Virus record (IMG/VR): IMGVR_UViG_3300044957_000763
Span: 248,001 to 312,000 of that record
DNA: 64,000 bases
Direction: 5' to 3' (one strand)
Shown: piece by piece, positions 15,822 through 37,931 of the stretch
Numbering within the stretch: the stretch's first letter is position 1
How the letters are laid out: each line of letters begins with the position of its first letter
Notes under the pieces: generated by a model
The model's input: the letters and a program-made list of their open reading frames with translations, nothing else
Told to the model about the DNA's origin: nothing
The model's database searches: none
Translations under genes and position numbers: made by a program

Positions 15822-17501
15822 CTACATACTGTCTGGCATAGAAACCCCAAGGATGCCACCAACCAGAGACAGTGTTTGCTTTGTTAATTGCACAATTTGC
15901 AATCGGGCATAAGTTTGTTCCGGTTCGTTTTCTTGGATAACTTTACAGTTTTCATAGAATTCGTGAAACATCTTTGATAGCTCTACGGCAAAGTGCGCCA
16001 ATTGATGAACACTGCATGTCTCGGCGCATTTGTGAACCTCATCATTTAGCGATAGACACTTGACAATCAGCTTGTTTTCTTGAATGGTCAACTTGTGATT
16101 CCAGTCAAATTCAACATGCTGCGACGGTGCTTTGGCCAAGATTGACGCACATCGCGCATGGGCATACTTGACATAGAAACAAGGGTTGTCTTGCGCTTGC
16201 TTAACTGCAAGTCCTATATCAAAGTCCATGTGCTTGCTGGCAGAAACATACAGGTAGAAGAATCGCACCACGTCTTTTGCAGTGTCGAAATCTGACCCAA
16301 GTTCTTGCGCAACCTCGTTAATCAAATCAACCAGGGTATACAAGTTGCCATCTCGCTTTCGCATTAACACAGGCTGACCTTCTTTGATAAATCGCACAGC
16401 CTGGAAAATCACAACATTGAGCGATTCTGGGTTATGACCAAGTGCAGCCACACCTGCCTTTAATCGCGGAATGTAACCATGATGGTCTGGTCCAAACAAG
16501 TCAACCACATGCTGGTTACCTCGAGCGTATTTGTCGTGATGATAACTGATGTCACTTGCGGCATATGTCATTCGTCCGTCTGACCGCACTAGAACTCGGT
16601 CGTCGGAATCTCCGTACTGTTTGGTCAATAACCACGTTGCGCCATCAATTTTTGCAGATTGGCCACTGTCTTGAAGGTGTTGTAATGTGACACCCACCTT
16701 ACCAGACTCAATCATCGCCTGCTCACTGACCCACATGTCGAACTCAACTCCGAACTGAGCGAGTTCTTGTTTCTGATTGTCAATCATCATTTGTTGTGAG
16801 GTTGATTGATACCAATTCGTGTCGGCGTTTATTAAGTGCGCCGCATCGTACATTGATACCAGCACACTTGCAATGCCCTCAACGTATTCTCCTTTGTATC
16901 CATTTTCAGGCATGTCGTAAGACATACCAAGTAAATTGAACACATGGTGCTTCACGCTTTCGGAAAACAGTCGCATTTGCTCGCTGTTGACACCATCATT
17001 GATGTAATACTCTCGTGTCACATTGTGACCAATCATAGTCAAGACTCGAGACAGCACATCACCAATAGCAGCGCCTCGGGCAGCGGCTACCGTAATCGGT
17101 CCGTTTGGGTTGACCGAAACATACTCAACACTATAGCTCTCAGGTTGTTTGGTGCTTGATATTGTTTCCCCACCAAGTGCGCTTTGTGTTGCGTGTTGCA
17201 ATAGTGTCGTGTCTACTTTGACGTTGAGAAACCCTGGCTTAGACCATATAAACGTCAAACCCTGCTCTTCAAGACCGGCGAAGCCTTTGGTCTGGTTAAT
17301 TGCATGGAACACACCATAACTGTCGGTGCCAGAGATTTTAGCTGCCCGCATACAAAATGTTGTGGTGTAATCATATTCTATATTAGATGCTGATGGCTGA
17401 AGGTCTATTGGAATAGACAACAACGAATCATGCAACAATCCTGCAATCACAGTCTGTTCGACGGCGTGTTCAATATGTTTTTCAATATCCAGTTGCAACA
17501 T
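15822..17501 (-). CDS. argS: arginyl-tRNA synthetase with a degenerate HIGH motif
   Basis: VEYVSVNPNGP, REYYIND, RSDGRMTYAASD, FGPDHHGY, NPCFYVKYAHAR; 559 aa. Confidence 0.92.
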   Translation of the reverse strand: MLQLDIEKHIEHAVEQTVIAGLLHDSLLSIPIDLQPSASNIEYDYTTTFCMRAAKISGTDSYGVFHAINQTKGFAGLEEQGLTFIWSKPGFLNVKVDTTLLQHATQSALGGETISSTKQPESYSVEYVSVNPNGPITVAAARGAAIGDVLSRVLTMIGHNVTREYYINDGVNSEQMRLFSESVKHHVFNLLGMSYDMPENGYKGEYVEGIASVLVSMYDAAHLINADTNWYQSTSQQMMIDNQKQELAQFGVEFDMWVSEQAMIESGKVGVTLQHLQDSGQSAKIDGATWLLTKQYGDSDDRVLVRSDGRMTYAASDISYHHDKYARGNQHVVDLFGPDHHGYIPRLKAGVAALGHNPESLNVVIFQAVRFIKEGQPVLMRKRDGNLYTLVDLINEVAQELGSDFDTAKDVVRFFYLYVSASKHMDFDIGLAVKQAQDNPCFYVKYAHARCASILAKAPSQHVEFDWNHKLTIQENKLIVKCLSLNDEVHKCAETCSVHQLAHFAVELSKMFHEFYENCKVIQENEPEQTYARLQIVQLTKQTLSLVGGILGVSMPDSM

Positions 17502-20929: not shown

Positions 20930-21177
20930 AACCTATCGCACGCCGGCGCATCTATGCGGGCTGATGAGATATATTCAAGTTGGAGATGTCGCATCAGCCC
21001 GCTCTGCTGTTGAGGCAACTGGCGCATTAGTAATTTCTGATGGCCGACTCGATTCTACGTTTGCCGTCTATGTAATTGACCCTCGATATGAAGCGATTAT
21101 GAATGCGCTGAAGAAATAATAGACTTGTCTATTGTTCTATGGTGTAATTCTGGTTTTACTTTGTGATATACTAGAAT

Positions 21178-21621
21178 ATGGCTACTTTACAAAGAGCAAT
21201 TGAACTGACCGTATTGTTGCACTCAAAACAAGTGGACAAATCCGGTCAGCCATATATACTTCACCCAATGCGCATTATGCTCAGGTGTTCAACAGCAGAA
21301 GAACGCCAGGCGGCTATAATGCACGACCTTATAGAAGACACTAATCTTACGATTGAAGAACTCGCCAAAGAGGGTTTTTGTCAATCCGTGATTGATTGCG
21401 TAAACTGTCTTACGCGCCGTGATGGTGAAACCTACGCAGATTTCATTGAACGATGCTGCGAGAACTCAATGGCAATCAAAATCAAGTTGTTGGACATTGC
21501 GGACAATATGGATGTCACACGGCTTGATACACTGGGAGAGAGCGACCTTGGTCGACTCAAGCGGTATCATCGAGCGAGAAAGCGATTACTTGAAGCACAA
21601 GGTGCGATAAGTATAGTATGA
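21178..21621 (+). CDS. small HD-domain protein (SpoT-like)
   Basis: GQPYILHP, MHDLIED, DIADNMDVTRL. Confidence 0.8.
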   Translation: MATLQRAIELTVLLHSKQVDKSGQPYILHPMRIMLRCSTAEERQAAIMHDLIEDTNLTIEELAKEGFCQSVIDCVNCLTRRDGETYADFIERCCENSMAIKIKLLDIADNMDVTRLDTLGESDLGRLKRYHRARKRLLEAQGAISIV

Positions 21622-21920
21622 GCGAAAACACAAACCCTCGACAACTTGTTTATGACGCTATCGACCGTGAGCGAGATTACCAAGATATGGTATGGGGTCG
21701 CGGCCATGATGAAGCACACGACCTTCCAGCATGGTTGTTAATCATGCGACATCTACTCGCTGAGGCCGAGACAGCATGGTTGAATGGCGGACCTGGAGAA
21801 AGCCAAAGAAAAATTCTTCAGACCGTCGCTACAGGTGTTGCTGCCATTGAAGTCTGCGGACTTTACGAACGTAATTACACGTCAAGCAGAAAGAGAAACG
21901 ACAACGTTCGCTACGGGTAA
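21618..21920 (+). CDS. MazG-like all-alpha NTP pyrophosphohydrolase
   Basis: ERDYQDMVWG...QTVATGVAAIE pattern. Confidence 0.5.
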   Translation: MSENTNPRQLVYDAIDRERDYQDMVWGRGHDEAHDLPAWLLIMRHLLAEAETAWLNGGPGESQRKILQTVATGVAAIEVCGLYERNYTSSRKRNDNVRYG

Positions 21921-22331
21921 TAGACATACCAGATGGAAAAATTGGTCTAGGGTTACATAGACCACAAATCCCGCAGGCGTATTGAATCGTTCTTTGAATT
22001 TTTCAATAGTTTGCGCGTGTGGGTCTTTGGTTAATTTTCTATACCAAAAAAGTGGCTTGTAGCTGTCAATAATGAAATGGCTGAAATAAATCCATGTTAT
22101 CAACAGTCCAAAAGTAACCCAATGTTCGCTCCATGCTTGTGGTGTTCCCCTCCAAAATAACATAAGCAAACCCACGCACAGTGTGTAAATAGCGCAATGT
22201 TTTGAGCGAACAACAGGGTCTTTCGTTTTGTTTTCTGCCATTGTTTGTGTTTGGAACAACCAGTCTCCTGTCATATGGCCTATTCCAAATAGAACAATGA
22301 GCGCACCGCCAATTGATTCGAGATTTGTCAT
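21882..22331 (-). CDS. DUF3307-like membrane protein
   Basis: HMTGDWLFQT, HCAIY, SHFIID, DQFFH. Confidence 0.8.
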   Translation of the reverse strand: MTNLESIGGALIVLFGIGHMTGDWLFQTQTMAENKTKDPVVRSKHCAIYTLCVGLLMLFWRGTPQAWSEHWVTFGLLITWIYFSHFIIDSYKPLFWYRKLTKDPHAQTIEKFKERFNTPAGFVVYVTLDQFFHLVCLLPVANVVVSLSA

Positions 22332-22459
22332 AATCCACCTCTTACTCCCATTATAACAAATTTCACCAAGGGGTTGACAAATCGCTCAAAAACATGCAAT
22401 CATACAAATCGTATTTCGTTTGTGGTATCATATCCACGTCGAAAGACATAGGAGAAACA

Positions 22460-24277
22460 ATGAATTCGAAGTTAACGCCTTTGGGCAAAATTACAATCTT
22501 GGTCGTTGTCACCACGGTTGCCTTCCTTGGATGGCGCATGTTTGGAGACAAGGTTAAATCAATGCTTGGTGGTGAAACAACCGCTTCGGTTGTGCCTAAG
22601 CAGGTCAATCTTCCTGCATTGACTGTATCGGCAGGTGAAGGCACCAACCTTCAACTCAACACGATTACAGAAACCCCATCTGCGAATGGTGGTACGTCTA
22701 TGCGTATGCTTTTGTGGGCATGGAATGCTCAGTCTGGTCTGATGCTTGCCAATGGTGGCGCAAAAACCACTCAGGGTTCGCTTATGGAACAGTTGGGAGT
22801 TAACTTACAGTTGACTCGCCAAGATGACCCGAGCAAGATGCAAGAAGCACTTATTGCATTCGCACAAGAACTCAAGAATGGCAATCCTCAGCCAAAATCT
22901 GGTGCGCACTATGTTGCCATCATGGGCGATGGTGCGGCCGCTTTCTTGAAGCCTGTCAATGACCAGTTGCGCAAACTCGGACCTGAATATACCGCCAAGG
23001 TTATCGGTTCAGCCGGTTATTCCCGTGGTGAAGATAAGTTCATGGGACCCGCAGAGTGGAAGAACAATCCAAATCTTGCAAAGGGCGGTGTTGTTGCTGG
23101 ATATCTGCGTGACGGAGACTGGAATATTGCTTTGAAGTGGCTTGGTGACAACAACATCAAGAACAACCCTGATGAGCGAACCTGGGACCCGGATGCACTG
23201 AACTGGGTTGCAGCCAATGACTACATTGACGCATCTGAAAAGTATATCGCCGGATACAACGAAGACCGCCCTGTGGTTCGCAACGGCAAGCGCACTGGTG
23301 AAACCAAGCGCATTACTGTTCAGGGTGTTGTAACGTGGACTCCCGGTGACGTTATTGTTGCCGAAAAGAAAGGTGGACTTGTTTCCATCGTGTCCACTCG
23401 AGAGTATTCCGCTCAGATGCCTAACACAATCATCGGCATCGACAAGTGGATGAAAGACAACCGAAAGGATGTCGAGAACATGTTGTCCGGTGTCTTTGCT
23501 GGCGGTGACGCTATTAAGTCGTCAGATGAGGCCTTGAAGAAGGCTTCGCAGATTAGCGCAAGCGTGTACAACGAGTCCGGTGCGGACGCCAATTACTGGT
23601 ATATGTACTTCAAGGGCACTACTAAGCGAGATGCAAAGGGTCTAATGGTTGAACTTGGTGGTTCGTCTGTCAACAACCTTGCAGACAATATGTTGCTGTA
23701 TGGCATGGTGCCTGGTTCTCAGAACCTGTTCGCCGCAACATACACAACTTTTGGAGATGTTGTTGTTCAGCAGTATCCCAACCTCGTGCCTTCGTATGAC
23801 CCAGTAAGTAGCATTCTTGATACTTCTTATATCAAGAATCTATCTGGTCGGTCTAACCAAACGTTGCGTAACGCTCAGATTGCCCAGGCTTCACCCAAGT
23901 ATGACCCGTCTGGCACAATTCAGCCAATTGGTTCAAAAAATAGCTGGCGGGCTTTCTTTGCTCCTGGTCAGACAGACATTCCTGCAAATGGTTCTAAGAC
24001 ACTGCGAACAATGTTGAATGACTTGTTGGTTGCTGGCAATGCCTATGTTGAAATTCATGGTCATGCTGACGGTGCCTCTGAGCGAGGTAAGTCTGATTCA
24101 TTGTCTGAGTCTCGTGCCTTCGCTATCAAGCGCTGGTTGGAAACACAGGCACCTGTGAACTTCCCGGCCGGTCGAATCCGTGTTGTATCGCACGGCAATT
24201 CGAATCCGTTGGAACCAAACACCGCTCGTGGTAGCGTTTGGAACCGACGTATCGAGGTTGTGATTGGCGTTCGATAA
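22460..24277 (+). CDS. ABC substrate-binding (NMT1/SsuA-like) protein with C-terminal OmpA domain
   Basis: SD AGGAGA; N-terminal TM helix; C-terminal IHGHAD..LSESRA...NRRIEV. Confidence 0.85.
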   Translation: MNSKLTPLGKITILVVVTTVAFLGWRMFGDKVKSMLGGETTASVVPKQVNLPALTVSAGEGTNLQLNTITETPSANGGTSMRMLLWAWNAQSGLMLANGGAKTTQGSLMEQLGVNLQLTRQDDPSKMQEALIAFAQELKNGNPQPKSGAHYVAIMGDGAAAFLKPVNDQLRKLGPEYTAKVIGSAGYSRGEDKFMGPAEWKNNPNLAKGGVVAGYLRDGDWNIALKWLGDNNIKNNPDERTWDPDALNWVAANDYIDASEKYIAGYNEDRPVVRNGKRTGETKRITVQGVVTWTPGDVIVAEKKGGLVSIVSTREYSAQMPNTIIGIDKWMKDNRKDVENMLSGVFAGGDAIKSSDEALKKASQISASVYNESGADANYWYMYFKGTTKRDAKGLMVELGGSSVNNLADNMLLYGMVPGSQNLFAATYTTFGDVVVQQYPNLVPSYDPVSSILDTSYIKNLSGRSNQTLRNAQIAQASPKYDPSGTIQPIGSKNSWRAFFAPGQTDIPANGSKTLRTMLNDLLVAGNAYVEIHGHADGASERGKSDSLSESRAFAIKRWLETQAPVNFPAGRIRVVSHGNSNPLEPNTARGSVWNRRIEVVIGVR

Positions 24278-24289
24278 GGTAACACGCAT

Positions 24290-25123
24290 ATGTCCACAGT
24301 AGTTGCTTCTCAATCCCCCAAGCCCCGCAAGGACTTGGGGGACATTCTCTCGGCGTTTGCACCAAACCACGTGCTATCTGCCTCTACAATGAAAATCATT
24401 GTATTGTTGCAAGTTATTGCGTGTTTGGTAGTGTGGATTAACTCACCATTCACAGTTCTACCAAAGCCAATGGAAGTGTGGCATGCACTGATTGAGTTGT
24501 TTACAAACCAGGGCATGGGTGGAGAAATCATTACAAGCATGGAGTTGAACATCAAAGCTATGCTGTTTACATGTGTGTTAGCACTTGGGCTCGCATACCT
24601 TACGGTGATGCCATTCTTTCGTCCTATAGTAACCGCAATGTCCAAAGGGCGATTTCTTAGCTTGGTTGGATTCACCTTTGTTTTTACATTGATGGTTGGT
24701 GGTGGTCACCCGCTTAAAATGTCATTATTGGTGTTTGGTATGACTGTGTTCTTCCTTACATCAATGGCTTCTGTAGTTGCTGAAATACCCAGAGAGGCTT
24801 TTGACCACGCAAGGACTCTTAGAATGAGTGAGTGGCGCACCGTATGGGAAGTCGTGATTCTAGGAACTGCCGATAAGGCACTTGAAGTATTACGACAAAA
24901 CGCCGCTATTGGATGGATGATGCTTACAATGGTAGAAGGCATCTCTCGTTCAGAAGGCGGAATAGGTGCCATGTTGTTGAATCAACAAAAGCATTTTCGC
25001 ATTGCAGAAGTGTTTGCGATTCAGCTTACAATTTTGATGGTTGGATTGTGCCAAGACTATGTGCTTGGTCTCATTAGACGTATTGTATGTCCGTATGCAT
25101 ATTTGACATTGGAGAGAAAATGA
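24290..25123 (+). CDS. ABC transporter permease
   Basis: multi-TM; EAFDHARTL EAA-like loop. Confidence 0.85.
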   Translation: MSTVVASQSPKPRKDLGDILSAFAPNHVLSASTMKIIVLLQVIACLVVWINSPFTVLPKPMEVWHALIELFTNQGMGGEIITSMELNIKAMLFTCVLALGLAYLTVMPFFRPIVTAMSKGRFLSLVGFTFVFTLMVGGGHPLKMSLLVFGMTVFFLTSMASVVAEIPREAFDHARTLRMSEWRTVWEVVILGTADKALEVLRQNAAIGWMMLTMVEGISRSEGGIGAMLLNQQKHFRIAEVFAIQLTILMVGLCQDYVLGLIRRIVCPYAYLTLERK

Positions 25124-25923
25124 ACTACTCTTATGAATTTACAGATACATTATTGTCTGTCCAAGGTGTCAACTTAAGCCTTGGTGGCAAAGAAATCCTG
25201 CGAGATGTCAACCTTGAAATCAAAGACATCCGTCGCCCTGACACCAAGCAAGGGCAAGTTGTTGGTCTGCTCGGCCCTTCTGGTATTGGAAAAACCCAGT
25301 TGTTCCGAATTATCTCTGGACTCAACAAACCAGATAGTGGTCGTGTACTGGTTGGCTTAGAACAAAAACCCGTGAACAAGGGTGATGTCGGAGTTGTAGC
25401 CCAAAACTATCCGCTGTTTCAGCACCGCACTGTGTATAGCAACGTGTTGGTTGCATCTGGTGGCAATGTTGAAAAGACAAGTGCACTACTGGAGCAATTT
25501 GGGATATCTGAACACGCAACAAAATATCCAGCACAACTTTCAGGCGGCCAAAGGCAACGCGCAGCTATTGCACAGCAATTTGCCTGTAGTGAACACTTGC
25601 TTTTGATGGATGAGCCATTTTCTGGTCTAGACTGCATTGCACTTAGACGGGTGAGCGAATTCATCAATAAGATTGCTTCTAGTAATGAGTTGGCAACAAT
25701 TATCATCGTTACACACGACGTTTCGGCAGCACTTACGGTTTGCGACACGATTGTGTTGTTGGGCAGAGACCGAAACGAAGATGGCGAAATCATTCCTGGT
25801 GCCAAGGTTCAGTCAGTCTATAACCTCATTGATGCCGGTCTCGCATGGAGAGAAGGGATTGAAAACAGTCCTCAATTTTTCACCATGCTCAACGAAGTTC
25901 GCGACAAATTTGCTACACTATAA
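25120..25923 (+). CDS. ABC transporter ATP-binding protein
   Basis: GPSGIGKT, LSGGQRQR, LLMDEPFS, VTHD; ATGA overlap with the permease. Confidence 0.95.
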   Translation: MNYSYEFTDTLLSVQGVNLSLGGKEILRDVNLEIKDIRRPDTKQGQVVGLLGPSGIGKTQLFRIISGLNKPDSGRVLVGLEQKPVNKGDVGVVAQNYPLFQHRTVYSNVLVASGGNVEKTSALLEQFGISEHATKYPAQLSGGQRQRAAIAQQFACSEHLLLMDEPFSGLDCIALRRVSEFINKIASSNELATIIIVTHDVSAALTVCDTIVLLGRDRNEDGEIIPGAKVQSVYNLIDAGLAWREGIENSPQFFTMLNEVRDKFATL

Positions 25924-25925
25924 TC

Positions 25926-26390
25926 ATGGACATCAGAAGTGGTTGTGGATACCCAGGTGCGTCTCTGAGCAATTTTGCGCCTCACAAGTTCATCATTGAT
26001 GATGTTGAGTGCAACAGCATGGAGGGCTTTTTGCAAAGTTTGAAATTCAAAAACCCAGACATGCAATTGGTTATATGTCTGTTGGTTGGCAAAAGTGCAA
26101 AGTTTGCCGGCAAGAAAAAGAAGTGGTGGAGTGACCAAAAGCTATATTGGCGCGGCAAAGAAATCATGCGTGATTCATCAGAGTATCAAGAACTCCTCGA
26201 CCGGGCGTATAACGCTCTGTGTGAACAAAGCGAGAAATTTAGGCTTGCTTTATTGGCCACAGGAAATGCTACAATAGAACACAGCATGGGCAAAACTGAC
26301 AAAGCACAAACCGTGCTGACACGACAAGAGTTCTGTTCTAGGCTGACAAAACTACGCACAGAACTACAAAAAGAGAATCATGAGGCTTAA
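25926..26390 (+). CDS. NADAR-family (T4 gp30.3-like) protein
   Basis: LSNFAPH..SMEGFLQSLKF...ALLATG..HS.G pattern. Confidence 0.7.
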   Translation: MDIRSGCGYPGASLSNFAPHKFIIDDVECNSMEGFLQSLKFKNPDMQLVICLLVGKSAKFAGKKKKWWSDQKLYWRGKEIMRDSSEYQELLDRAYNALCEQSEKFRLALLATGNATIEHSMGKTDKAQTVLTRQEFCSRLTKLRTELQKENHEA

Positions 26391-27267
26391 TCAATATATT
26401 GAAGCATTTAAGGAACCTGGAAATCTTCTGGCACTAGCAAGTTTTGCCATGTTATCTACTGCCACATGGGACCCAAGGGTATTATGTGTTGGTGCGGTGG
26501 TTGAGGCGTTGTATTTGCTAGTATTTGCAGACAGCAAAATTTACCACAAGAAACTAAGGGACAAAGAAAACAAGCTCAAAGAAGAAGTGTTCCGCAGAGA
26601 GTTTGAAGAACTGCGTCAAAAAGCCATTGGTGAAGTGTCAAAACCTATAGCAGAGCGATTTCAAACTCTTGAGCATATTAGAAATCAAGTTGAACAGGCT
26701 TCGGTTGACAAGGAAACTTGGTATCTTGATGTTGTGCGCAAGCTAGACCAAATGTTGATGGCGTTCTTAAATTTTGGCCTCAAGGAGTCGCAGTTTAGAA
26801 ACCACTTACATAATGCAATGCGCACGCTTGCAACACAGAAAAAGCGCAACGTCGGCAAGGTAGGAGCGTGTCCTGATGATGCGACACTTGAAGAGGTCGA
26901 ACAATGGACTAGAGACGTCGCTGAACACATCACACAATCGTACAGTGATGAGATTGCCGATGTTGAAAACAAAATAAATCAAACACAGGCCGCAGACCCA
27001 AACTTGCCGATTCTTCAAAAACGCGCTGAGTTGATTAAGCGACGCAGTGAGTATGCAGGCAAAGTAGGTAGAATGCTAGTGAGTATGCATCACCAAATGC
27101 GCTTGCTTGAAGACACATTTGGTCTTATCTCTGACGAGGCTCAGAGCAGACCGCCACAACAAGTGCTGACAGACATTGAAGAAGCAGTGTTCCAAAGCAC
27201 ATTGTTGACCAACGCAATTGATGAATTCGCCTCTTCTAACGAACAGGTGTTAACCGTAGGAGCATAA
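26380..27267 (+). CDS. membrane-anchored coiled-coil protein
   Basis: two N-terminal hydrophobic segments, then a long helical region. Confidence 0.7.
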   Translation: MRLNQYIEAFKEPGNLLALASFAMLSTATWDPRVLCVGAVVEALYLLVFADSKIYHKKLRDKENKLKEEVFRREFEELRQKAIGEVSKPIAERFQTLEHIRNQVEQASVDKETWYLDVVRKLDQMLMAFLNFGLKESQFRNHLHNAMRTLATQKKRNVGKVGACPDDATLEEVEQWTRDVAEHITQSYSDEIADVENKINQTQAADPNLPILQKRAELIKRRSEYAGKVGRMLVSMHHQMRLLEDTFGLISDEAQSRPPQQVLTDIEEAVFQSTLLTNAIDEFASSNEQVLTVGA

Positions 27268-27271
27268 CATA

Positions 27272-28027
27272 ATGAGTGATATTCTAAAGAAAGTCAAAGG
27301 GTTGTTTGTCGAAGGTGGCGATAGCCAAAGCACAGATATGCCCAGTGAATCTGCCGGCAACATTGGTGGCGATGACGCATGGAAGCAATGGGAAAACATT
27401 GCAAAAGGGGAGGCGAGTCGCACCCCAATGCCTCTAGCAGAAGCCATTGCGCGACAACCAGGACCAGATATAGACTCTGTGTCTGTCACACTACCACCAC
27501 CTGCGGCCAAGCCGGCTGATGAGTTTGTCATGCCAAAGAAGCGCGAAGACGGTAGCTGGGACTTCTCGCCAATTTATGCACACTCCAATTTACAACCGCC
27601 GGCATTCACTGCAGAGCAGGCCAGAGACATTATCTCGTCTTTGCCCACATCTCTTCCCCTTGAGGTACGCAGGGAAACGGTGAGCAAGACAATTGGTGCC
27701 ATTGGCAAAACACTTGGTATTACACCAGATGTTATTGCGTCTGATGCCGCATTGAAGATTGTGGCTGTTGAAGACTTTCGCGGCAAAATGAATCAGCGAT
27801 TTGGCGAGTATGAAGTTAAGGCACAACAGGCCATTTCTGAATACGAGAAAAAGATTGCTGAAACAAAGCTAAGTATTGAGTCGGCAAAAGCTAGGTCAGC
27901 AGAAGTCATGAGCGCATGCGATACAGAGATTGATAGACTCGATGATGTCACTGAGTTCTTTACACTTGACACCGGTTCTAGCAAACATGTCGCATCTGCC
28001 TCAAAACCAGAGAAAGTGGGTGTATAA
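27272..28027 (+). CDS. coiled-coil hypothetical protein
   Basis: N-terminal MSDILKKVKGLFVE amphipathic helix, Pro-rich linker, C-terminal coiled coil. Confidence 0.7.
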   Translation: MSDILKKVKGLFVEGGDSQSTDMPSESAGNIGGDDAWKQWENIAKGEASRTPMPLAEAIARQPGPDIDSVSVTLPPPAAKPADEFVMPKKREDGSWDFSPIYAHSNLQPPAFTAEQARDIISSLPTSLPLEVRRETVSKTIGAIGKTLGITPDVIASDAALKIVAVEDFRGKMNQRFGEYEVKAQQAISEYEKKIAETKLSIESAKARSAEVMSACDTEIDRLDDVTEFFTLDTGSSKHVASASKPEKVGV

Positions 28028-28228
28028 CCAAATCAGGAGGCAATCTACACATGATGCACTTGATGAAAAATAGCACTTTACAGACTCGTTTACCACATGG
28101 CCCCAGACACTCAAGACACTCCATTCAACAATTGTTGAACTGATTGTTGCATCTCGAAATAGTTGCCAATGCCCTCAATTTGGCACCCGACGAGTCTGCA
28201 GCAAGCCGCGAGGGTGTAGTTGCCCGTC

Positions 28229-28267
28229 CACGAATAACCTGCTTTTTGCAGGTTATTCGTGTTTTTT
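28229..28267 (+). terminator. intrinsic terminator ending the ABC/OmpA cluster
   Basis: 14-bp stem CACGAATAACCTGC/GCAGGTTATTCGTG followed by T6. Confidence 0.85.
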
Positions 28268-28316
28268 GTTTAACATTAAATCGGGAGTAACCCAAAAACA
28301 AAACAAAGAGGTAACT

Positions 28317-28859
28317 ATGCTACGATTTATTTTCACAATTAATGTCGCTATTGCGGCTGCAAAACGCGCAACATTTTCTCGACAACGACTCGCAGATACT
28401 TGGTATGAGCGATACATTCGACACTATGTCAGGCTTTCACTCATGCGACCAAATAGCTTTTTTATGTTGACAGGTCCAAACCGAACCAGCAGATTGCTTC
28501 CATCAGGTCCTAATTTGCTGGTTACAACAGGTGTCATCAAATGGAATCAATCATGCGAAGTGTTTGGTCCTATTGAAAAATCTCAAACCAGGCTCAACTT
28601 CAAACACAAAAATCAAAGTGACACGCTTGCCAATTACCACCCTGATTTAGAAGATAACAAAAAATTCAAGTCTAATGTGGCGGCTTGTGTATATTTTGAA
28701 GAATTGCAAAGGCCAAATACTGTTGAAGAGATTGAAATTACCTACGAAGACGCAATGACCAAAGTAAATACTGACATTATTGGCGCACTTGATGAATACA
28801 TTAAGGCAGACAAGGAGTCAGAAAATACCGATAACAAAAATCAAGTCGGATTAAACTAA
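28317..28859 (+). CDS. hypothetical protein
   Basis: GAGG SD before ATG 28317. Confidence 0.6.
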   Translation: MLRFIFTINVAIAAAKRATFSRQRLADTWYERYIRHYVRLSLMRPNSFFMLTGPNRTSRLLPSGPNLLVTTGVIKWNQSCEVFGPIEKSQTRLNFKHKNQSDTLANYHPDLEDNKKFKSNVAACVYFEELQRPNTVEEIEITYEDAMTKVNTDIIGALDEYIKADKESENTDNKNQVGLN

Positions 28860-29398
28860 TTTGATTTAGTTTCGCGCAAGAGTGTTTTGATATCTTCTCT
28901 TAAGGCTTCGATTTCAGACAATGCATTTTGTGTTTCACGAGTAAGTGCCTTGATATCTTCGTTCATAGTCCCAACTTCTTCTTGCATATTTTGCAATTGG
29001 CGATTTGTTTCTAGATTCATCAAGTATTCGTGCTGAGCTCGAAGCCTGTCTCGGTCTGCTTGTCGTCTTTGACTCATCAAAATGATTGGTGCCTGAAGTG
29101 CCGCAATGGTAGACAAAATCAAATTTAGCAATACAAAAGGCGGTGCGTCAAAAGAGTGTGGCTGGAAAAACCTTAGTGTGTTGAACGCAATCCAACACAG
29201 CATAGTGCAACAGAAGCAACCAACGAACCACCAACTTCCAGCGACCTCGGTTACCTTGTCTGCAAGGTTGTCGCCAAAGGTTTTTGCCCGTTCGAATTCC
29301 TCCATTGCCTCGAGCAATTTAGAATCACTTTGGGCGAATAGTTCGTCCCAGCGACCGGTGTTTCGAGCGTTGTTATTTGTGTTGCGAATGTGTCCCAT
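28856..29398 (-). CDS. DUF1003 membrane protein
   Basis: GSWWF...PPFVLLNLILSTIAALQAPIILMSQRRQADRDR. Confidence 0.9.
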   Translation of the reverse strand: MGHIRNTNNNARNTGRWDELFAQSDSKLLEAMEEFERAKTFGDNLADKVTEVAGSWWFVGCFCCTMLCWIAFNTLRFFQPHSFDAPPFVLLNLILSTIAALQAPIILMSQRRQADRDRLRAQHEYLMNLETNRQLQNMQEEVGTMNEDIKALTRETQNALSEIEALREDIKTLLRETKSN

Positions 29399-29486
29399 CT
29401 ACGGCCGCCTCCTTTCATTTGATATTCACCTGAAGTCTTATTATATCACACTTGACATACGACCTTTAGTTGTGCTAGAATCAGGT

Positions 29487-29672
29487 ATGGAATTCAAACG
29501 TGGTGAAAAAGTTACAGACGGTCTATTAACTGGTATTGTTTGCAAGCCTAAGACATATATTGACGACGAATTGCGAACGGTTATTGTGCTGTCAAAATCA
29601 AAACAGCATATTGACTTAGACCCATCAACGCTGACCAAGATTAAAAAAGACGACGAAGAGCAATGGTGGTAG
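29487..29672 (+). CDS. small hypothetical protein
   Basis: TTGACA-18-TAGAAT-5-ATG. Confidence 0.6.
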   Translation: MEFKRGEKVTDGLLTGIVCKPKTYIDDELRTVIVLSKSKQHIDLDPSTLTKIKKDDEEQWW

Positions 29673-32068: not shown

Positions 32069-32764
32069 ATGGCTGAATATGCTAACTTTCATGAATTCCG
32101 CAGATATATGAACCAAGCAGACGTTGTTGGACTTTGTGATGCGATTACATGTCACAAGAACAAAGAACAATTGTCTAAATGGTTACAGTCTCAAATGAAC
32201 AGGAGAGTTGCGTCTGATGCGGCGTCTATGCATGGTATGGCATTTTGTAGTTTTGAGCACACTTTACAGTGTCCAATGAGCTATTTATCGGATGAGGTTC
32301 TAAAGTGTGCCGGTGTTGCAATTGAAAGAATAATAACCCGCTTAATCGCACAGAAAGATGTAGACGCAACATCATATGGAGATGCATTTACATATCAATA
32401 CGAGAATGCATATGGTCTGCACAGTTATGATTCTGATTCTATTCGGGTTGGCAACGATGAAGTTTTGGTTTCAGTAAACAGTCCGGCACCAGATGATTTT
32501 ATTGAAGGATTCAAGAATTGTTTTGCTGTGAGACACAAGCAGCACCACTCATCGCTTTTATCAGTGGTGCCCAAAGATTGTTTTGCTATTGGATTGGCTA
32601 TTTTGGCAAAAAGCAGTAAGATGATTCAAATTCATGTTGGTGTTGCGTTGAAAAATCCGATGAATGTGCGTATAATTACAAACGAGGCTAAAAGTAGTCC
32701 ATTTGACAAAATGATGGCTGTTAACACCATTATTGACAAGGCAGGTTTTCATGAGCAAATATAG
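32069..32764 (+). CDS. hypothetical protein
   Basis: 231-aa ORF; TGG-TACACT 6 nt before ATG. Confidence 0.6.
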   Translation: MAEYANFHEFRRYMNQADVVGLCDAITCHKNKEQLSKWLQSQMNRRVASDAASMHGMAFCSFEHTLQCPMSYLSDEVLKCAGVAIERIITRLIAQKDVDATSYGDAFTYQYENAYGLHSYDSDSIRVGNDEVLVSVNSPAPDDFIEGFKNCFAVRHKQHHSSLLSVVPKDCFAIGLAILAKSSKMIQIHVGVALKNPMNVRIITNEAKSSPFDKMMAVNTIIDKAGFHEQI

Positions 32765-34772
32765 AGACCCAGAAGATACACGAGATAATCATATACCAGG
32801 ACTGCCAGATAGCATGGAACAACAGCGTGTTTCAGAAGACGTTATCAAGTCTAGAGTACGTGAAATCAACGAAGTTGGTGCAAAACTTAAAACTGAATTT
32901 GCTGGCATTGACAAGCAGATTGACACCATCATTCGCTATGTAACCCCTTTTTACGCGACGCCAGAATTGCTCACAAGACCCATAGTAGTGTGCCTGTGGG
33001 GCATGACTGGCGTAGGTAAGACACACGTTCTTCGTCGTTTGGCCAATTTAACCAACATGCAATCTCGATACGCCACATTCGATATGGGGGAATATTCTGG
33101 TGGATTCTCGGAATATACACTCAGGTATCAGCTTGACGATGTGGCAGACACTGTTGAAGACGGTAGGGCAATGATTGTGTTTGATGAAATGCAAACCATT
33201 AGGTTCATTGACGAAACAGGAAGCGAAGTCGACCGCCCGGCTGCAAGATTGATTTGGGACGTGCTGGATGGTGCACCGATGACTCGAAATACGTCTTTTA
33301 ACAATGATGTACTCGAGATGGTTAAAGACTTCAAGCGACTGCGACGACTCGGTGTAACTATTGAGAAGAACACGGTTGTATCTGGCACAAATCATTTCAA
33401 GAAAATCCGCCGACGATGGTCTAGAGAAGATTCAGAAGACACATTTACTGCTATAAATTCTGATGATTTTGAAACGATGTACAGGGCTAATCCTGTGCAC
33501 TTCAATTACAACGAAGACTATGAAGCATGGTTAAAGGTTTTTGAAGAATTCAAAGACATCAACGATTTCATTTCTTATATCCAGTTGGTTAGTGATGGGT
33601 ACAAACTTGGTGAACCAAACAACCTGTCTCGTAGTTTGATTTTCTGCGTTGGCAATCTTGATGAGGTATATCATGAAAGCCACGATATCAGCCCTGATAT
33701 TGACATTGAAAGCCTGCGAGAATACACTGAGAAAGTCACGCTTTCTCAGGTGAAAACCGCACTATTAGACAGATTCAGACCAGAACAGATTGCAAGACTT
33801 GGCAACAACCATGTTATCTATCCAAGCCTTGACAGAAATAGTTACTGGAAAATCATTAGAAAACACATAAGCAACTCGCTTGCCAGGGTCAAATCGGCAT
33901 ACAATGTTGACTTGAACGTGGACGAAAGCGTGGCTGAACTTATTTTCAAAGAGAGCGTATTTCCAACTCAGGGCGCAAGACCGGTAAATAACTCATTCAG
34001 CATGTTGTTTGACTCATATCTTGCCGATGCATTGTGCCAATTACCAGCCACTGGACCAATTGATTGGAAATATGATGCTACCAATCGAAAATACCAGTTC
34101 TCTCGTGGTGAAAGCACGTATTCGGTTGATGTTCAACTTATGGTTGAGTCGCAACGCGATAATGAAGAAAATGACAAGCAGGCAATTATAGCTGTTCACG
34201 AGGCAGGCCATGGACTCGCTGCCGCGCTCTATACTGGCAGATGGCCAAAGGAACTTCGCTCTCGCACTGCTGGAACAGAGGGCGGATATACGACGTTTGA
34301 ACCGCTTCAGTTCAAAACTCGCAATGACATTCTTGGAATAATTAAACAAGGCATGGCTGGCATTGTAGCTGAGGAAGTAATTTATGGAGTCGATAACATC
34401 AGCAATGGTTCCGGAGAAGACTTTTCGATGATTACTAAAGAAATCCAACAAGCAGTTGCCGCACTTGGGCTCTTCAGAGAGTCTTGGATTGGCACAAGCA
34501 ATTCACATGTTGGCCTTCTTTCAGATTCGCAAAGCATGAAGAAAGTGTCTCAAATCGTTATTGACTTGATTAAAGAATCACACAGCACGATGGTTGAGGA
34601 CTTTATTCAGCACAAAGAACTAATTTTGCGAATTGCAGAATACTTGATATCCCATACTGTCATGCCGGGGGTCATGTTTGCCGAGATGTGCGAAAAGCAC
34701 GGGGTGAAATTGCCAACTAGATTTAGTCACAGAGAATCACTACTGCAGTCATTAAAAGAAATCAATAGTTAA
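32751..34772 (+). CDS. soluble AAA+ ATPase fused to an M41 (FtsH-type) zinc protease domain
   Basis: GMTGVGKT, IVFDE, FRPEQIARLG, GARP; HEAGH, AEEV, GSGED; no TM segment. Confidence 0.85.
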   Translation: MSKYRDPEDTRDNHIPGLPDSMEQQRVSEDVIKSRVREINEVGAKLKTEFAGIDKQIDTIIRYVTPFYATPELLTRPIVVCLWGMTGVGKTHVLRRLANLTNMQSRYATFDMGEYSGGFSEYTLRYQLDDVADTVEDGRAMIVFDEMQTIRFIDETGSEVDRPAARLIWDVLDGAPMTRNTSFNNDVLEMVKDFKRLRRLGVTIEKNTVVSGTNHFKKIRRRWSREDSEDTFTAINSDDFETMYRANPVHFNYNEDYEAWLKVFEEFKDINDFISYIQLVSDGYKLGEPNNLSRSLIFCVGNLDEVYHESHDISPDIDIESLREYTEKVTLSQVKTALLDRFRPEQIARLGNNHVIYPSLDRNSYWKIIRKHISNSLARVKSAYNVDLNVDESVAELIFKESVFPTQGARPVNNSFSMLFDSYLADALCQLPATGPIDWKYDATNRKYQFSRGESTYSVDVQLMVESQRDNEENDKQAIIAVHEAGHGLAAALYTGRWPKELRSRTAGTEGGYTTFEPLQFKTRNDILGIIKQGMAGIVAEEVIYGVDNISNGSGEDFSMITKEIQQAVAALGLFRESWIGTSNSHVGLLSDSQSMKKVSQIVIDLIKESHSTMVEDFIQHKELILRIAEYLISHTVMPGVMFAEMCEKHGVKLPTRFSHRESLLQSLKEINS

Positions 34773-36673: not shown

Positions 36674-37931
36674 ACAAAAAAGGCAGGAATATGTAAATAG
36701 AATATATAAGTAATTCTATGTGCTGAAGGCTTTTAAGTACAGAATATATCCGAACCAGAAACAGGTTGAAATGTTCAACGAACATTTCGGAGCAACACGA
36801 TTCGTCTATAACTGGGGATTGGAAAAGAAAACGAAAGCCTATCAACAAGAGTCGAAGACTTTATCGTGTTTTGAGTTAACTAATCGACTGAAGCAACTCA
36901 AAGAAGAGCAGCCTTGGTTGAAGGCTGTGAATAGCCAATCACTCCAGATGGCATTGCGTCATTTAGACAGTGCTTACACTAGGTTCTTTCGAGAGAAGAA
37001 AGGATTTCCCAAGTTCAAATCAAAACACAATCCAAAACAATCATTTCAGTGTCCTCAGAATTCATCTGTTGACTGGAATAGTGAAACGCTCTCTATTCCG
37101 AAAATCAAGGGGATTAAAGCCAGGCTCCATCGAAAATTCGATGGAGAAATCAAAACTGTCACAATAAGCAAGAATTGTGTTGGACATTATTATGCATCAA
37201 TTCTTGTTGAGACAACAGAATTGATGCCGCAAAAGACGGTTCTGGACATTGACAATGCCGTAGGCATAGATGTTGGCATTAGTAGATTCCTAACCACTTC
37301 AGATGGAATGATTGTTGAGAATCGAAAGTTCTTCAAAAAGTCAGAGAAGAGACTGGCTTATGAACAGTATCGACTTAGTAAGATGAAGAAAGGCTCTGCT
37401 AACAGAACTAAACAAAAGAAAAGAATTGCCCGTATTCACGAGCATGTATCCAATCAAAGACGAGATTTTCTGCACAAAGTGACGAGAAAACTAGTTGACG
37501 AGAATCAAGCGACTACGTTTTGCATCGAAGACCTTTCAATTAAGAACATGCAGAAGAATCACTGTCTTGCCAAATCCATCGCAGACGCATCTTGGGGTAT
37601 GTTCTTTGAACTCCTGAAGTACAAATGTGATTGGTCAGGAAAGAATCTTCTTGATATCGGAAGATTTGAACCAAGTAGCAAGATGTGCAGTGCATGTGGT
37701 GCTGTAAACAGAGAACTAAAGCTATCTGATAGAACATGGACATGCGCCTGTGGCGCATGTCATGACAGAGATAAAAATGCCGCCGAGAACATTCGTAGAA
37801 TGGCTTTTCAGCGTCAGAACTTAATTAGATGTATAGGGCTGGAACAGCCCGAATCAACGCCTTTGGACACTGTAGCAATAGCTACGTGAATGAAAAAGGA
37901 AGTCGCACACTTTATGCGTGCGGCAGTTCAC
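36674..37931 (+). mobile_element. tnpB-only IS200/IS605-type element
   Basis: right end hairpin CGCAC..GTGCG then GGCAGTTCAC; left junction inferred from promoter restoration. Confidence 0.65.
36720..37889 (+). CDS. tnpB: TnpB RNA-guided endonuclease
   Basis: KAFKYRIYP, GIDVG, IEDL, SSKMCSACG, CACG..HDRDKNAA. Confidence 0.95.
   Translation: MLKAFKYRIYPNQKQVEMFNEHFGATRFVYNWGLEKKTKAYQQESKTLSCFELTNRLKQLKEEQPWLKAVNSQSLQMALRHLDSAYTRFFREKKGFPKFKSKHNPKQSFQCPQNSSVDWNSETLSIPKIKGIKARLHRKFDGEIKTVTISKNCVGHYYASILVETTELMPQKTVLDIDNAVGIDVGISRFLTTSDGMIVENRKFFKKSEKRLAYEQYRLSKMKKGSANRTKQKKRIARIHEHVSNQRRDFLHKVTRKLVDENQATTFCIEDLSIKNMQKNHCLAKSIADASWGMFFELLKYKCDWSGKNLLDIGRFEPSSKMCSACGAVNRELKLSDRTWTCACGACHDRDKNAAENIRRMAFQRQNLIRCIGLEQPESTPLDTVAIAT

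What the first reader, a model, noticed from the sequence alone, without database searches (positions are those of the whole stretch)
22460..28267. Phage-borne membrane operon: OmpA-fused ABC binding protein, permease, ATPase and two coiled-coil proteins
Seen: a tightly coupled block, SD-led at its first gene, closed by a 14-bp terminator. The binding protein has an N-terminal TM anchor and a C-terminal peptidoglycan-binding OmpA domain, followed by a 2-TM coiled-coil protein and a soluble amphipathic-helix coiled-coil protein. A complete ABC system is unusual in a phage. Inference: an envelope-stress, membrane-repair or superinfection-exclusion complex rather than simple nutrient uptake; the OmpA domain suggests a diderm host.
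Basis: partly seen in the sequence, partly recalled or inferred. Interest (0 to 1): 0.66.

Follow-up and report, generated by a model that had tools for sequence, protein, structure and literature searches.

The report
Phage copy of PspA-linked ABC operon
A 479-kb lake-water phage carries a complete, intact copy of a little-known bacterial envelope operon: a cell-wall-tethered binding protein, an ABC transporter and two membrane-associated helical proteins, which in bacteria sits next to membrane-repair (PspA) genes, so the phage probably uses it to manage its host's inner membrane, not just to feed.

Summary
The block is real: promoter-like site, SD-led first gene, six (not five) tightly coupled genes, and a 14-bp terminator.

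The cassette is not an orphan. A scan of one genome per species found 417 g1-encoding stretches, mostly Acidobacteriota and Armatimonadota. Among the best 80 loci, g2/g3 are adjacent in 73, g5-like genes in 63, g6-like in 36, true PspA in 28 and a double AAA+ ATPase in 17. Nine other large-phage contigs carry a second variant in which a g6-like gene and a TM-anchored PspA-like gene precede the ABC genes.

The operon type was already noted computationally (Ravi et al. 2024). A 2026 preprint reports ABC systems next to PspA in huge phages.

This phage's version matches the Armatimonadota arrangement. It lacks adjacent PspA and AAA+; its PspA lies 73 kb away.

The most likely role is envelope or membrane-stress management coupled to transport of an unknown solute. 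This rests on context only, and no RNA run holding the stretch was found.

The parts
22374..22403 (+). Sigma-70-like promoter candidate (TTGACA, 18 nt, TG-extended AATCAT), 57 nt upstream of g1
   Evidence: 10 of 12 matches. It is a consensus match only; the region holds no more such sites than shuffled sequence.
22460..24277 (+). g1, 605 aa: N-terminal TM anchor (about 5-29), disordered linker (29-66), class-F (NrtA/CmpA/SsuA/TauA-like) binding-protein fold (about 78-465), linker, OmpA-like peptidoglycan-binding domain (499-602)
   Evidence: The Asp537/Arg552 pair of the OmpA-like motif is invariant in alignment A4.
24290..25123 (+). g2, 277 aa: ABC importer-type permease with about 5 hydrophobic segments and a degenerate EAA loop around residues 165-190
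   Evidence: BPD_transp_1, 20.3 bits, below cut-off. (SaoP, NtrB and TauC models, all far below cut-off). (phrog_6743).. 41-72% identical to neighbours of g1 homologues in 73 of 80 bacterial loci and 8 viral loci.
25120..25923 (+). g3, 267 aa (278 aa if started at 25087): ABC ATPase with all catalytic motifs
   Evidence: ABC_tran, 95.2 bits.. (GPSGIGKT, Q-loop, LSGGQ, MDEP, H-loop). ATGA overlap with the g2 stop.
25926..26390 (+). g4, 154 aa: T4 gp30.3-family protein inserted between the ATPase and g5. It is not part of the conserved module.
   Evidence: PF08010, 176 bits. (phrog_652). Weak TIGR02464 hit, E 0.006. Among all loci it is present only in the window and in the close relative L011.
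26380..27267 (+). g5, 295 aa: N-terminal helical hairpin in the membrane (13-49), then six long cytoplasmic helices; residues 108-295 form a BAR-like antiparallel bundle
   Evidence: (pLDDT 89.2, pTM 0.79).. Family found next to the ABC genes in 63 of 80 bacterial loci.
27272..28027 (+). g6, 251 aa: soluble. N-terminal amphipathic helix, Pro/Ala-rich low-complexity linker, conserved helical core (FTAEQ...SLP..LP), coiled coil, and a conserved acidic C-terminal motif (LDDV.EFF.LD)
   Evidence: Homologous to the about 215-aa gene that precedes the PspA-like gene in other phage loci (hhalign probability 94.6, E 7e-8). Some bacterial members hit both profiles.
28229..28267 (+). Intrinsic terminator: 14-bp stem, 5-nt loop, T-run. 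It is preceded by 200 nt of untranslated sequence (28028-28228).
   Evidence: No Rfam family matches in 21000-29500.

Best explanation
**What it is.** The block is a phage-carried, apparently functional copy of a bacterial envelope module. Comparative genomics has already flagged this module, but nobody has studied it experimentally. It consists of:
- a membrane-anchored, peptidoglycan-tethered solute-binding protein (g1);
- an importer-type permease (g2) and an ABC ATPase (g3);
- two cytoplasmic-face helical proteins: g5, membrane-inserted by a hairpin, and g6, soluble with an amphipathic N-terminus.

In bacteria the same genes are repeatedly joined to PspA (a bacterial ESCRT-III protein) and to a double AAA+ ATPase.

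**Shown computationally.**
- The domain make-up and folds.
- Intact ATPase motifs.
- Operon signals.
- Conservation of the five-gene set in Armatimonadota in the same order.
- The PspA and AAA+ linkage in Acidobacteriota.
- A second phage variant with a TM-anchored PspA-like gene.

**Inferred.** g1 docks on a g2 dimer energised by g3 and moves a small solute of unknown identity. The fold class contains binders of nitrate, bicarbonate, sulfonate and thiamine precursors. The OmpA domain fixes the complex between the inner membrane and the cell wall.

g5 and g6 act on the cytoplasmic leaflet, by sensing, scaffolding or curving it. They act together with PspA, which this phage supplies from a separate locus.

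The phage acquired the cassette from, or exchanged it with, an Armatimonadota-like diderm host. It expresses the cassette as one transcript to keep the host inner membrane and envelope working through a long huge-phage infection. g4 (gp30.3) is an unrelated insertion.
For: Anatomy.

Phage setting: 478,840-bp IMG/VR record with a 127-bp terminal repeat, CheckV 100%, 63 tRNAs plus a tmRNA.

Conservation:
- 417 g1-encoding stretches in one-genome-per-species bacteria.
- Among the best 80 loci: g2/g3 in 73, g5-like in 63, g6-like in 36, PspA in 28, double AAA+ in 17.
- The order g1-g2-g3-g5-g6 is shared with Armatimonadota loci and a bacterial-looking contig, L012.
- Bryobacterales order: g6-like, PspA, g1, g2, g3, g5-like, AAA+.

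Other phage loci, L002-L010: g6-like gene, then a 2-TM helical gene that matches PspA (hhalign probability 82.8, E 9e-6), then g1-g2-g3.

Tree: window plus L011 form a clade on the Armatimonadota side of a 100% SH-aLRT split from 50 of the 52 Acidobacteriota rows.

Literature:
- Preprint 10.64898/2026.10.24.761521 reports 15 huge-phage PspA genes next to complete ABC systems.

The phage's own PspA (104 bits) lies beside a vWA-like gene at G000:196,892-198,375.
Against: - No member of the system has an experimentally known function or substrate. The stress or remodelling role rests on gene neighbourhood alone.
- In the window itself neither PspA nor the AAA+ ATPase is adjacent.
- The transporter parts look like a normal, competent importer, so simple uptake is not excluded.
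- No RNA run holding the stretch was found, so expression is unshown.
- The direction of transfer between phage and bacterium is not resolved by the tree.
- Five standard Pfam hallmark families (terminase, HK97 capsid, tail sheath) found nothing in the genome. Viral identity therefore rests on IMG/VR and CheckV, the terminal repeat and gene content.
Confidence: 0.6

Rival explanations
1. Ordinary auxiliary metabolic gene set. It is a NitT/TauT-type importer for nitrate, bicarbonate, a sulfonate or a similar small solute, boosting host nutrition during infection. Tethering of the binding protein is just a local variant of lipoprotein anchoring, and g5 and g6 are regulators or irrelevant passengers.
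For: The best structural matches are NrtA, CmpA, TauA and SsuA. The permease and ATPase score best, though far below cut-off, against nitrate, taurine, sulfonate and sulfate models. All ATPase motifs are intact. Phages are known to carry binding proteins and ABC parts (PHROGs families).
Against: The binding domain has no sequence similarity to any NMT1, NrtA or SsuA family: Pfam and PDB profile searches were blank or gave only chance-level rows. The OmpA fusion and the g5/g6 partners are conserved across phyla and gene orders, which passengers would not be. There is recurrent linkage to PspA and AAA+ and none to assimilation genes.
Confidence: 0.2
2. Envelope-spanning mechanical or signalling device, not a transporter. 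ATP hydrolysis by g3 drives conformational changes through g2 into the wall-anchored g1, in the manner of FtsEX-like or MotB-like systems. This reports or adjusts the spacing between inner membrane and peptidoglycan, or recruits ESCRT-III-like polymers. The phage uses it to build or stabilise a membrane structure.
For: g1 is fixed at both ends, to the membrane by its TM helix and to the wall by OmpA. The binding domain is extremely conserved (about 100 invariant columns across phage lineages) yet unlike any solute-binder family. Partners with membrane-curving-type folds sit on the cytoplasmic side.
Against: The permease is of the type-I importer kind, for which no mechanotransmission example is known to me (own knowledge). 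There is no direct evidence. Complex prediction gave no verdict on g5 with g6.
Confidence: 0.12
3. Superinfection exclusion or anti-phage function. The module alters the envelope so that other phages cannot inject or the cell resists lysis from without.
For: It is located in a phage and acts on the envelope. The gp30.3 gene inside the operon shows the site tolerates phage-type insertions.
Against: The module is mainly chromosomal in bacteria, among housekeeping and glycoside-hydrolase genes, and not in defence islands. No defence library (PADLOC) was run. Nothing in the parts resembles known exclusion proteins.
Confidence: 0.05
4. The block is not phage-borne. It is bacterial DNA joined to a viral bin or contig by mis-assembly.
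For: A relative of the genome is contiguous with bacterial DNA in a 1.36-Mb MAG contig. No standard Pfam structural hallmark was found.
Against: The cassette lies 270 kb inside a 479-kb record with terminal repeats. GC content is continuous with its surroundings, 0.455-0.468 against 0.41-0.46. The same synteny (DUF3307, cassette with gp30.3, DUF1003, FtsH-like) holds in the 531-kb relative, whose cassette is 79% identical, whereas that MAG's own bacterial copy is only 57% identical. Identical pieces occur in further lake metagenome runs.
Confidence: 0.03

Closest known systems
PspA / TM-Snf7 / double-AAA+ operons with an ABC ATPase, permease and PBPb-OmpA protein (Ravi et al., mSystems 2024, PMC11237479, section 18 and Table S3, example OGG56892.1)
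   Same: The PBP-OmpA fusion with an N-terminal anchor, the permease, the ABC ATPase and a following membrane-anchored helical protein are shared. The g5 family occupies that slot in Bryobacterales operons that also hold PspA and the AAA+ gene. An unnamed 'X' gene before PspA corresponds in position to the g6 family.
   Different: The window has no PspA and no AAA+ gene in the operon, and PspA lies 73 kb away. It carries an extra gp30.3 gene. It is on a phage. The published 'divergent Snf7' call for the g5-type protein could not be reproduced here.
Complete ABC systems adjacent to PspA in huge phages (bioRxiv 10.64898/2026.10.24.761521)
   Same: Huge-phage setting. Binding protein, permease and ATPase together with a membrane-stress protein. 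The L002-L010 loci (g6-like, TM-PspA-like, g1, g2, g3) probably belong to this set.
   Different: The preprint anchors on PspA. The window's cassette would be missed by that criterion, because its neighbours are g5 and g6 and not PspA. I could not check whether the 15 cases have the OmpA fusion.
NitT/TauT-family importers: NrtABCD, CmpABCD, SsuABC, TauABC
   Same: The fold of the binding domain (Foldseek E 1e-9 to 1e-6). A tethered binding protein; from my own knowledge NrtA and CmpA are lipoproteins. The permease and ATPase are nearest to these families.
   Different: No sequence-level membership. The C-terminal peptidoglycan anchor. The two helical partners. No assimilation genes nearby. The ligand is unknown.
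Classical Psp and Lia systems (PspABC, LiaIH, mycobacterial PspA-Rv2743c-Rv2742c)
   Same: A soluble effector plus a small membrane anchor acting on the cytoplasmic face of the inner membrane. The language-model search placed g5 nearest, among named clusters, to Rv2743c (0.86, a lead only).
   Different: g5 and g6 match no Psp family. No ABC transporter or wall anchor is part of the classical systems.

Membership tests
PspA-linked PBPb-OmpA ABC operon (Ravi et al. 2024) | Anchored protein combining a periplasmic binding-protein domain with a C-terminal OmpA domain | tested here: met
   PF00691, 49.3 bits. Class-F PBP fold. N-terminal hydrophobic helix.
PspA-linked PBPb-OmpA ABC operon (Ravi et al. 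2024) | Adjacent ABC permease and ABC ATPase | tested here: met
   Translationally coupled.
PspA-linked PBPb-OmpA ABC operon (Ravi et al. 2024) | Membrane-anchored helical protein (published as divergent Snf7) downstream of the ATPase | tested here: inconclusive
PspA-linked PBPb-OmpA ABC operon (Ravi et al. 2024) | PspA gene in the same operon | tested here: not met
   No PspA within the block. The only PF04012 match in the genome is at G000:196,994-197,641, about 73 kb away.
PspA-linked PBPb-OmpA ABC operon (Ravi et al. 2024) | Double (inactive plus active) classical AAA+ ATPase gene | tested here: not met
   The best genome hit to the bacterial AAA+ partner is 27% identity over 269 aa at G000:410,016-411,641, far away and not the same architecture. 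The FtsH-like gene at 32733-34772 is unrelated.
NitT/TauT ABC importers (NrtA/CmpA/SsuA/TauA type) | Binding protein belongs to the NMT1, NMT1_2 or SsuA sequence families | tested here: not met
   No Pfam hit for the isolated domain. One of nine relatives hits NMT1_2 at E 0.079. The PDB profile search found no binding-protein match, only two chance-level rows (E 1 and 1.4).
NitT/TauT ABC importers (NrtA/CmpA/SsuA/TauA type) | Class-F two-lobe binding-protein fold | tested here: met
   Foldseek: 2g29, 2i49, 6ssy, 3uif and 3ksx, with E 7e-9 to 3e-6 and TM-target 0.48-0.65.
NitT/TauT ABC importers (NrtA/CmpA/SsuA/TauA type) | BPD_transp_1 permease with EAA coupling loop | tested here: inconclusive
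   20.3 bits against a cut-off of 26.4. A degenerate EA-x-D-x-A-x-x-L motif was seen by eye.
NitT/TauT ABC importers (NrtA/CmpA/SsuA/TauA type) | Known ligand-contact residues for nitrate, bicarbonate or sulfonate | not testable with these tools
   No residue-level structural superposition is available.
PspA/IM30 (PF04012) | g5 or g6 matches the family profile | tested here: not met
   By contrast, the 2-TM protein of the other phage variant (A2) does match (probability 82.8, E 9e-6).
T4 gp30.3 family (PF08010), for g4 | Full-length profile match above the curated cut-off | tested here: met
   176 bits against a cut-off of 36, profile positions 1-137 of 138.
Tailed huge phage (setting of the block) | Terminase, major capsid or tail sheath genes | tested here: inconclusive
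   PF03237, PF17289, PF03354, PF05065 and PF04984 gave no hit. In favour: IMG/VR record, 127-bp terminal repeat, CheckV 100%, 63 tRNAs plus a tmRNA, a gp30.3 gene and many ORFans.

The most novel reading that the evidence does not exclude
The five conserved genes form one envelope-spanning machine. The wall-anchored binding domain does not feed the cell. It gates ATP hydrolysis in response to an envelope cue. g5 (hairpin-anchored, BAR-like) and g6 then shape or patch the inner membrane, with PspA recruited in trans. The phage version is a natural minimal set, without PspA or AAA+ in cis. It would be a new type of ABC-driven membrane-remodelling device, which huge phages deploy to hold the host membrane together or to build an infection compartment.
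Probability: 0.15. Interest if true: 0.8.

Novelty: new member of a known kind. Interest (0 to 1): 0.45.

Why it matters
The operon is widespread in soil and freshwater diderms: the scan found 417 g1-encoding stretches among one genome per species. It has also been captured at least twice by very large phages. Yet no component has a known substrate or phenotype.

It is one of the few cases where a transporter, a cell-wall anchor and ESCRT-III-type membrane proteins are genetically welded together. Working out what it moves or senses would bear on how bacteria, and the phages that need them alive for a long infection, maintain the inner membrane.

This analysis adds four things to the published notes:
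- The soluble g6 family is a conserved partner that links the two phage variants and the bacterial operons.
- The binding domain is a new sequence family recognisable only by fold.
- The Armatimonadota-type arrangement works without PspA or AAA+ in cis, and this is the version the phage carries.
- It gives a host lead (Armatimonadota) for a 479-kb lake phage.

Tried and rejected
- **Nucleotide search.** megablast of the block against 50,697 phage records found no match.
- **Protein search against phages.** One distant hit, LR756500.1, an unannotated record.
- **g5 and the other-variant 2-TM protein.** Direct tblastn of g5 and g6 against the other viral loci found nothing. Single-sequence hhalign was not significant. 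Only the profile-profile comparison linked g6 to the upstream 215-aa family. g5 against the other variant's 2-TM protein stayed negative even with 42 sequences, so I do not claim they are homologous.
- **g5 and PspA.** hhalign was negative.
- **Family and structure libraries for g5 and g6.** Pfam, NCBIfam and PHROGs gave nothing. PDB profile searches gave nothing for g5.
- **TAL-effector rows for g6.** These are sums of many sub-threshold repeat matches (0 stretches pass alone), and I treat them as spurious.
- **Language-model search.** It gave only unnamed clusters plus an Rv2743c lead at 0.86, which could not be verified.
- **Complex prediction on g5 with g6.** No verdict, so it is not evidence either way.
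- **Hallmark families.** Searches in the genome were blank.
- **Rfam.** Blank for the 200-nt tail and for the whole block.
- **Genetic code.** No alternative genetic code was used.
None is in the block. A vWA-like gene sits beside the phage's distant PspA; this was seen by motif only.

Full report
**Setting.** The window is bases 248,001-312,000 of a 478,840-bp IMG/VR virus record with direct terminal repeats and a CheckV completeness of 100%. In the laid genome I found an exact 127-bp terminal repeat, 44.5% GC, 63 tRNA genes and a tmRNA. Around the block are an arginyl-tRNA synthetase, a cytidylyltransferase, HD-domain proteins, a GH39-like protein, DUF3307, DUF1003, an FtsH-like AAA-protease, two TnpB-type genes and many ORFans. 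Five standard Pfam hallmark families (Terminase_6N, Terminase_6C, TerL_ATPase, Phage_capsid, Phage_sheath_1) gave no match. The viral call therefore rests on the record's classification, the repeat and the gene content. The GC content of the block (0.455-0.468) is continuous with its flanks.

**Observation.** On the + strand there are six coupled genes, not five:
- g1 22460-24277
- g2 24290-25123
- g3 25120-25923 (longest ORF from 25087)
- g4 25926-26390
- g5 26380-27267
- g6 27272-28027

g1 is preceded by AGGAGA and by a TTGACA/TG-AATCAT promoter-like site at 22374-22403. The block ends, after 200 untranslated bases, in a 14-pair hairpin with a T-run at 28229-28267. No Rfam family matches the region.

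**The ABC part.**
- *g1* has one N-terminal hydrophobic helix and a C-terminal OmpA-like domain (PF00691, 49.3 bits). The Asp/Arg pair of that motif is invariant among relatives.
- The 390 residues between these two elements match no Pfam, NCBIfam or PDB sequence, even as a profile. An AlphaFold model built on nine homologues (mean pLDDT 73, with 78-96 over most of residues 71-300 and mostly 62-93, with dips, to 460) folds as a two-lobe class-F binding protein. Its best matches are NrtA, CmpA, TauA, SsuA, ThiY and Thi5 (Foldseek E 7e-9 to 3e-6, TM-target 0.48-0.65).
- *g2* is a weak BPD_transp_1 match with about five hydrophobic segments.
- *g3* has every catalytic ABC motif.

The binding domain is a new sequence family recognisable only by fold.

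**g4.** This is a full-length T4 gp30.3 homologue (176 bits). Among all the loci examined it is present only here and in the closest relative. I read it as an insertion and not a component of the module.

**g5 and g6.** Neither matches any family library.
- *g5:* a model on 42 sequences is confident (pLDDT 89.2, pTM 0.79). It shows a helical hairpin at 13-49 followed by six long helices. Lys/Arg-rich flanks place the bundle in the cytoplasm; this is inferred from the positive-inside rule.
- *g6* is soluble. It has an amphipathic N-terminus, a low-complexity linker, a conserved helical core, a coiled coil and a conserved acidic C-terminal motif.

**Relatives in viruses.**
- Eight IMG/VR contigs (42-179 kb) and the 462-kb record LR756500.1 encode g1-g2-g3 at 30-55% identity. 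There the two genes upstream of g1 are a protein of about 215 aa and a 2-TM helical protein of about 350 aa.
- Profile-profile comparison shows that the 215-aa family is homologous to g6 (probability 94.6, E 7e-8).
- The 2-TM family is not detectably related to g5. It does match PspA (probability 82.8, E 9e-6, aligned on the N-terminal DP..L....M signature).

**Relatives in bacteria.** A scan of one genome per species found 417 g1-encoding stretches. The best 80 are 52-62% identical to the window's g1, closer than the other viral copies. They come from Acidobacteriota (52), Armatimonadota (23), Abditibacteriota, Myxococcota and one Actinomycetota-labelled MAG. Many of these contigs are cut short. 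Within them:
- g2/g3 are adjacent in 73 loci;
- a g5-family gene is present in 63;
- a g6-family gene in 36;
- a true PspA in 28 (PF04012, 62-72 bits in the two tested);
- a double AAA+ ATPase of about 580 aa in 17.

Three arrangements recur:
- Armatimonadota: g1-g2-g3-g5-g6, as in the window.
- Bryobacterales: g6-like, PspA, g1, g2, g3, g5-like, AAA+.
- Thermoanaerobaculia: g2-g3-g5-like-g1. In four of these loci (L013, L014, L016, L025) PspA and the AAA+ gene lie on the opposite strand, preceded in at least two by a g6-like gene.

A bacterial-looking 63-kb contig (L012), flanked by glycoside hydrolases and a GAF kinase, has g1-g2-g3-g5-g6 without gp30.3.

**Phylogeny and host.**
- In a g1 tree, the window pairs with L011 (79% identity, 100% SH-aLRT). 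It lies on the side of a 100%-supported split that holds the Armatimonadota and the other viral copies, apart from 50 of the 52 Acidobacteriota rows. The direction of transfer is not resolved.
- L011 lies on a 1.36-Mb contig of an Armatimonadota MAG. Its first 531 kb are a collinear, circularly permuted relative of the whole phage genome at 64-72% nucleotide identity.
- At about 531.3 kb the GC content rises from 54% to 60%, and the genes become bacterial: GH116, CcmF and multihaem cytochromes. This is either a very large prophage or a chimeric join.
- That MAG also has its own bacterial cassette, at 57% identity (L039).
- All of this fits a diderm, Armatimonadota-like host.

**What is known.**
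- Ravi et al. [quoted passage not shown] Their Table S3 string for OGG56892.1 has the same order as the Bryobacterales loci here.
- A 2026 preprint (10.64898/2026.10.24.761521) reports complete ABC systems next to 15 PspA genes of huge phages.
- The kind of system, and its presence in huge phages, are therefore already on record, though only as gene-neighbourhood notes.
- The window's copy differs in three ways. It has neither PspA nor AAA+ in cis. The phage's PspA (104 bits) lies 73 kb away beside a vWA-like gene. It carries the gp30.3 insertion.

**Mechanism.**
- *Shown (computationally):* the architecture, the intact ATPase, the operon signals and the conserved partnerships.
- *Inferred:* g1 docks on g2/g3 and moves or senses a small molecule while pinned between membrane and wall. 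g5 and g6 work on the cytoplasmic leaflet with PspA-type proteins. The phage expresses the set to keep the host membrane competent.
- I put 0.6 on this reading, 0.2 on a plain nutrient importer, 0.12 on a non-transporting mechanical or signalling device, 0.05 on superinfection exclusion and 0.03 on an assembly artefact.

**Other data.** The stretch occurs at 100% identity in fragmentary contigs of further lake-water metagenome runs. No RNA run holds it, so expression is untested. The single complex prediction (g5 with g6) returned no verdict and is not used as evidence.

Noticed in passing
window 25926-26390: A T4 gp30.3-family gene (PF08010, 176 bits) is inserted, translationally coupled, between the ABC ATPase and g5. 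It has a faint hit (E 0.006) to the YbiA/NADAR-type N-glycosidase model TIGR02464, which hints at a nucleotide or ADP-ribose-processing role unrelated to the module.
   Followed up: partly
G000:196,892-198,375 (outside the window): The phage encodes its own PspA (PF04012, 104 bits). Immediately upstream on the same strand is a 244-aa protein with a vWA-type DxSGS motif. This is the PspA-vWA pairing that the 2026 preprint describes for other huge phages.
   Followed up: partly
L011 / G001:C5:1-548,000: A 1.36-Mb contig of an Armatimonadota MAG (GCA_018268375.1) begins with a 531-kb collinear, circularly permuted relative of this phage and then continues into 60%-GC bacterial genes (GH116, CcmF, cytochromes). 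A few hundred bases at contig position 1 and at about 531 kb match overlapping parts of the same G000 region (G000 about 135.9-136.4 kb and about 136.2-138.2 kb). This is either a half-megabase prophage or a chimeric join.
   Followed up: partly
G000:157,728-157,803 (outside the window): ARAGORN reports a tRNA with anticodon CTA (an amber suppressor, labelled Pyl) among 63 tRNAs and a tmRNA with the tag ANNNFALAV. I did not test whether TAG is recoded anywhere in the genome. All genes of the block read cleanly in table 11.
   Followed up: no
whole genome G000: No match to Terminase_6N, Terminase_6C, TerL_ATPase, HK97 Phage_capsid or Phage_sheath_1. The structural genes of this lineage are too divergent for these Pfam models, or are of another type.
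   Followed up: partly
window 6360-7538 (-) and 36720-37889 (+): Two TnpB / IS605 OrfB-type genes (OrfB_IS605 plus Cas12f1-like TNB domain). The second is full-length and includes the HTH domain.
   Followed up: no
window 21882-22331 (-): A DUF3307 membrane protein lies divergently just upstream of g1. The same neighbour is found in L011, and a homologue lies about 6 kb upstream of the cassette in viral locus L002, so it may be a loosely associated partner.
   Followed up: no
window 15822-17501 (-) and 32733-34772 (+): A phage-encoded arginyl-tRNA synthetase and an FtsH-like AAA/M41 protease flank the region. Both are syntenic in L011. The FtsH-like gene is unrelated to the double AAA+ ATPase of the bacterial operons.
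   Followed up: partly
window 28028-28228: There are 200 nt of non-coding sequence between the g6 stop and the terminator. No Rfam match was found, and I did not fold the stretch or compare it across relatives.
   Followed up: no
g6 profile (A6) positions 114-161: The conserved FTAEQ...SLP..LP...R segment draws summed hits to TAL-effector repeats in the PDB (E to 2e-11, but no single stretch significant). This is probably a chance helix-loop-helix resemblance inflated by the number of repeats.
   Followed up: no
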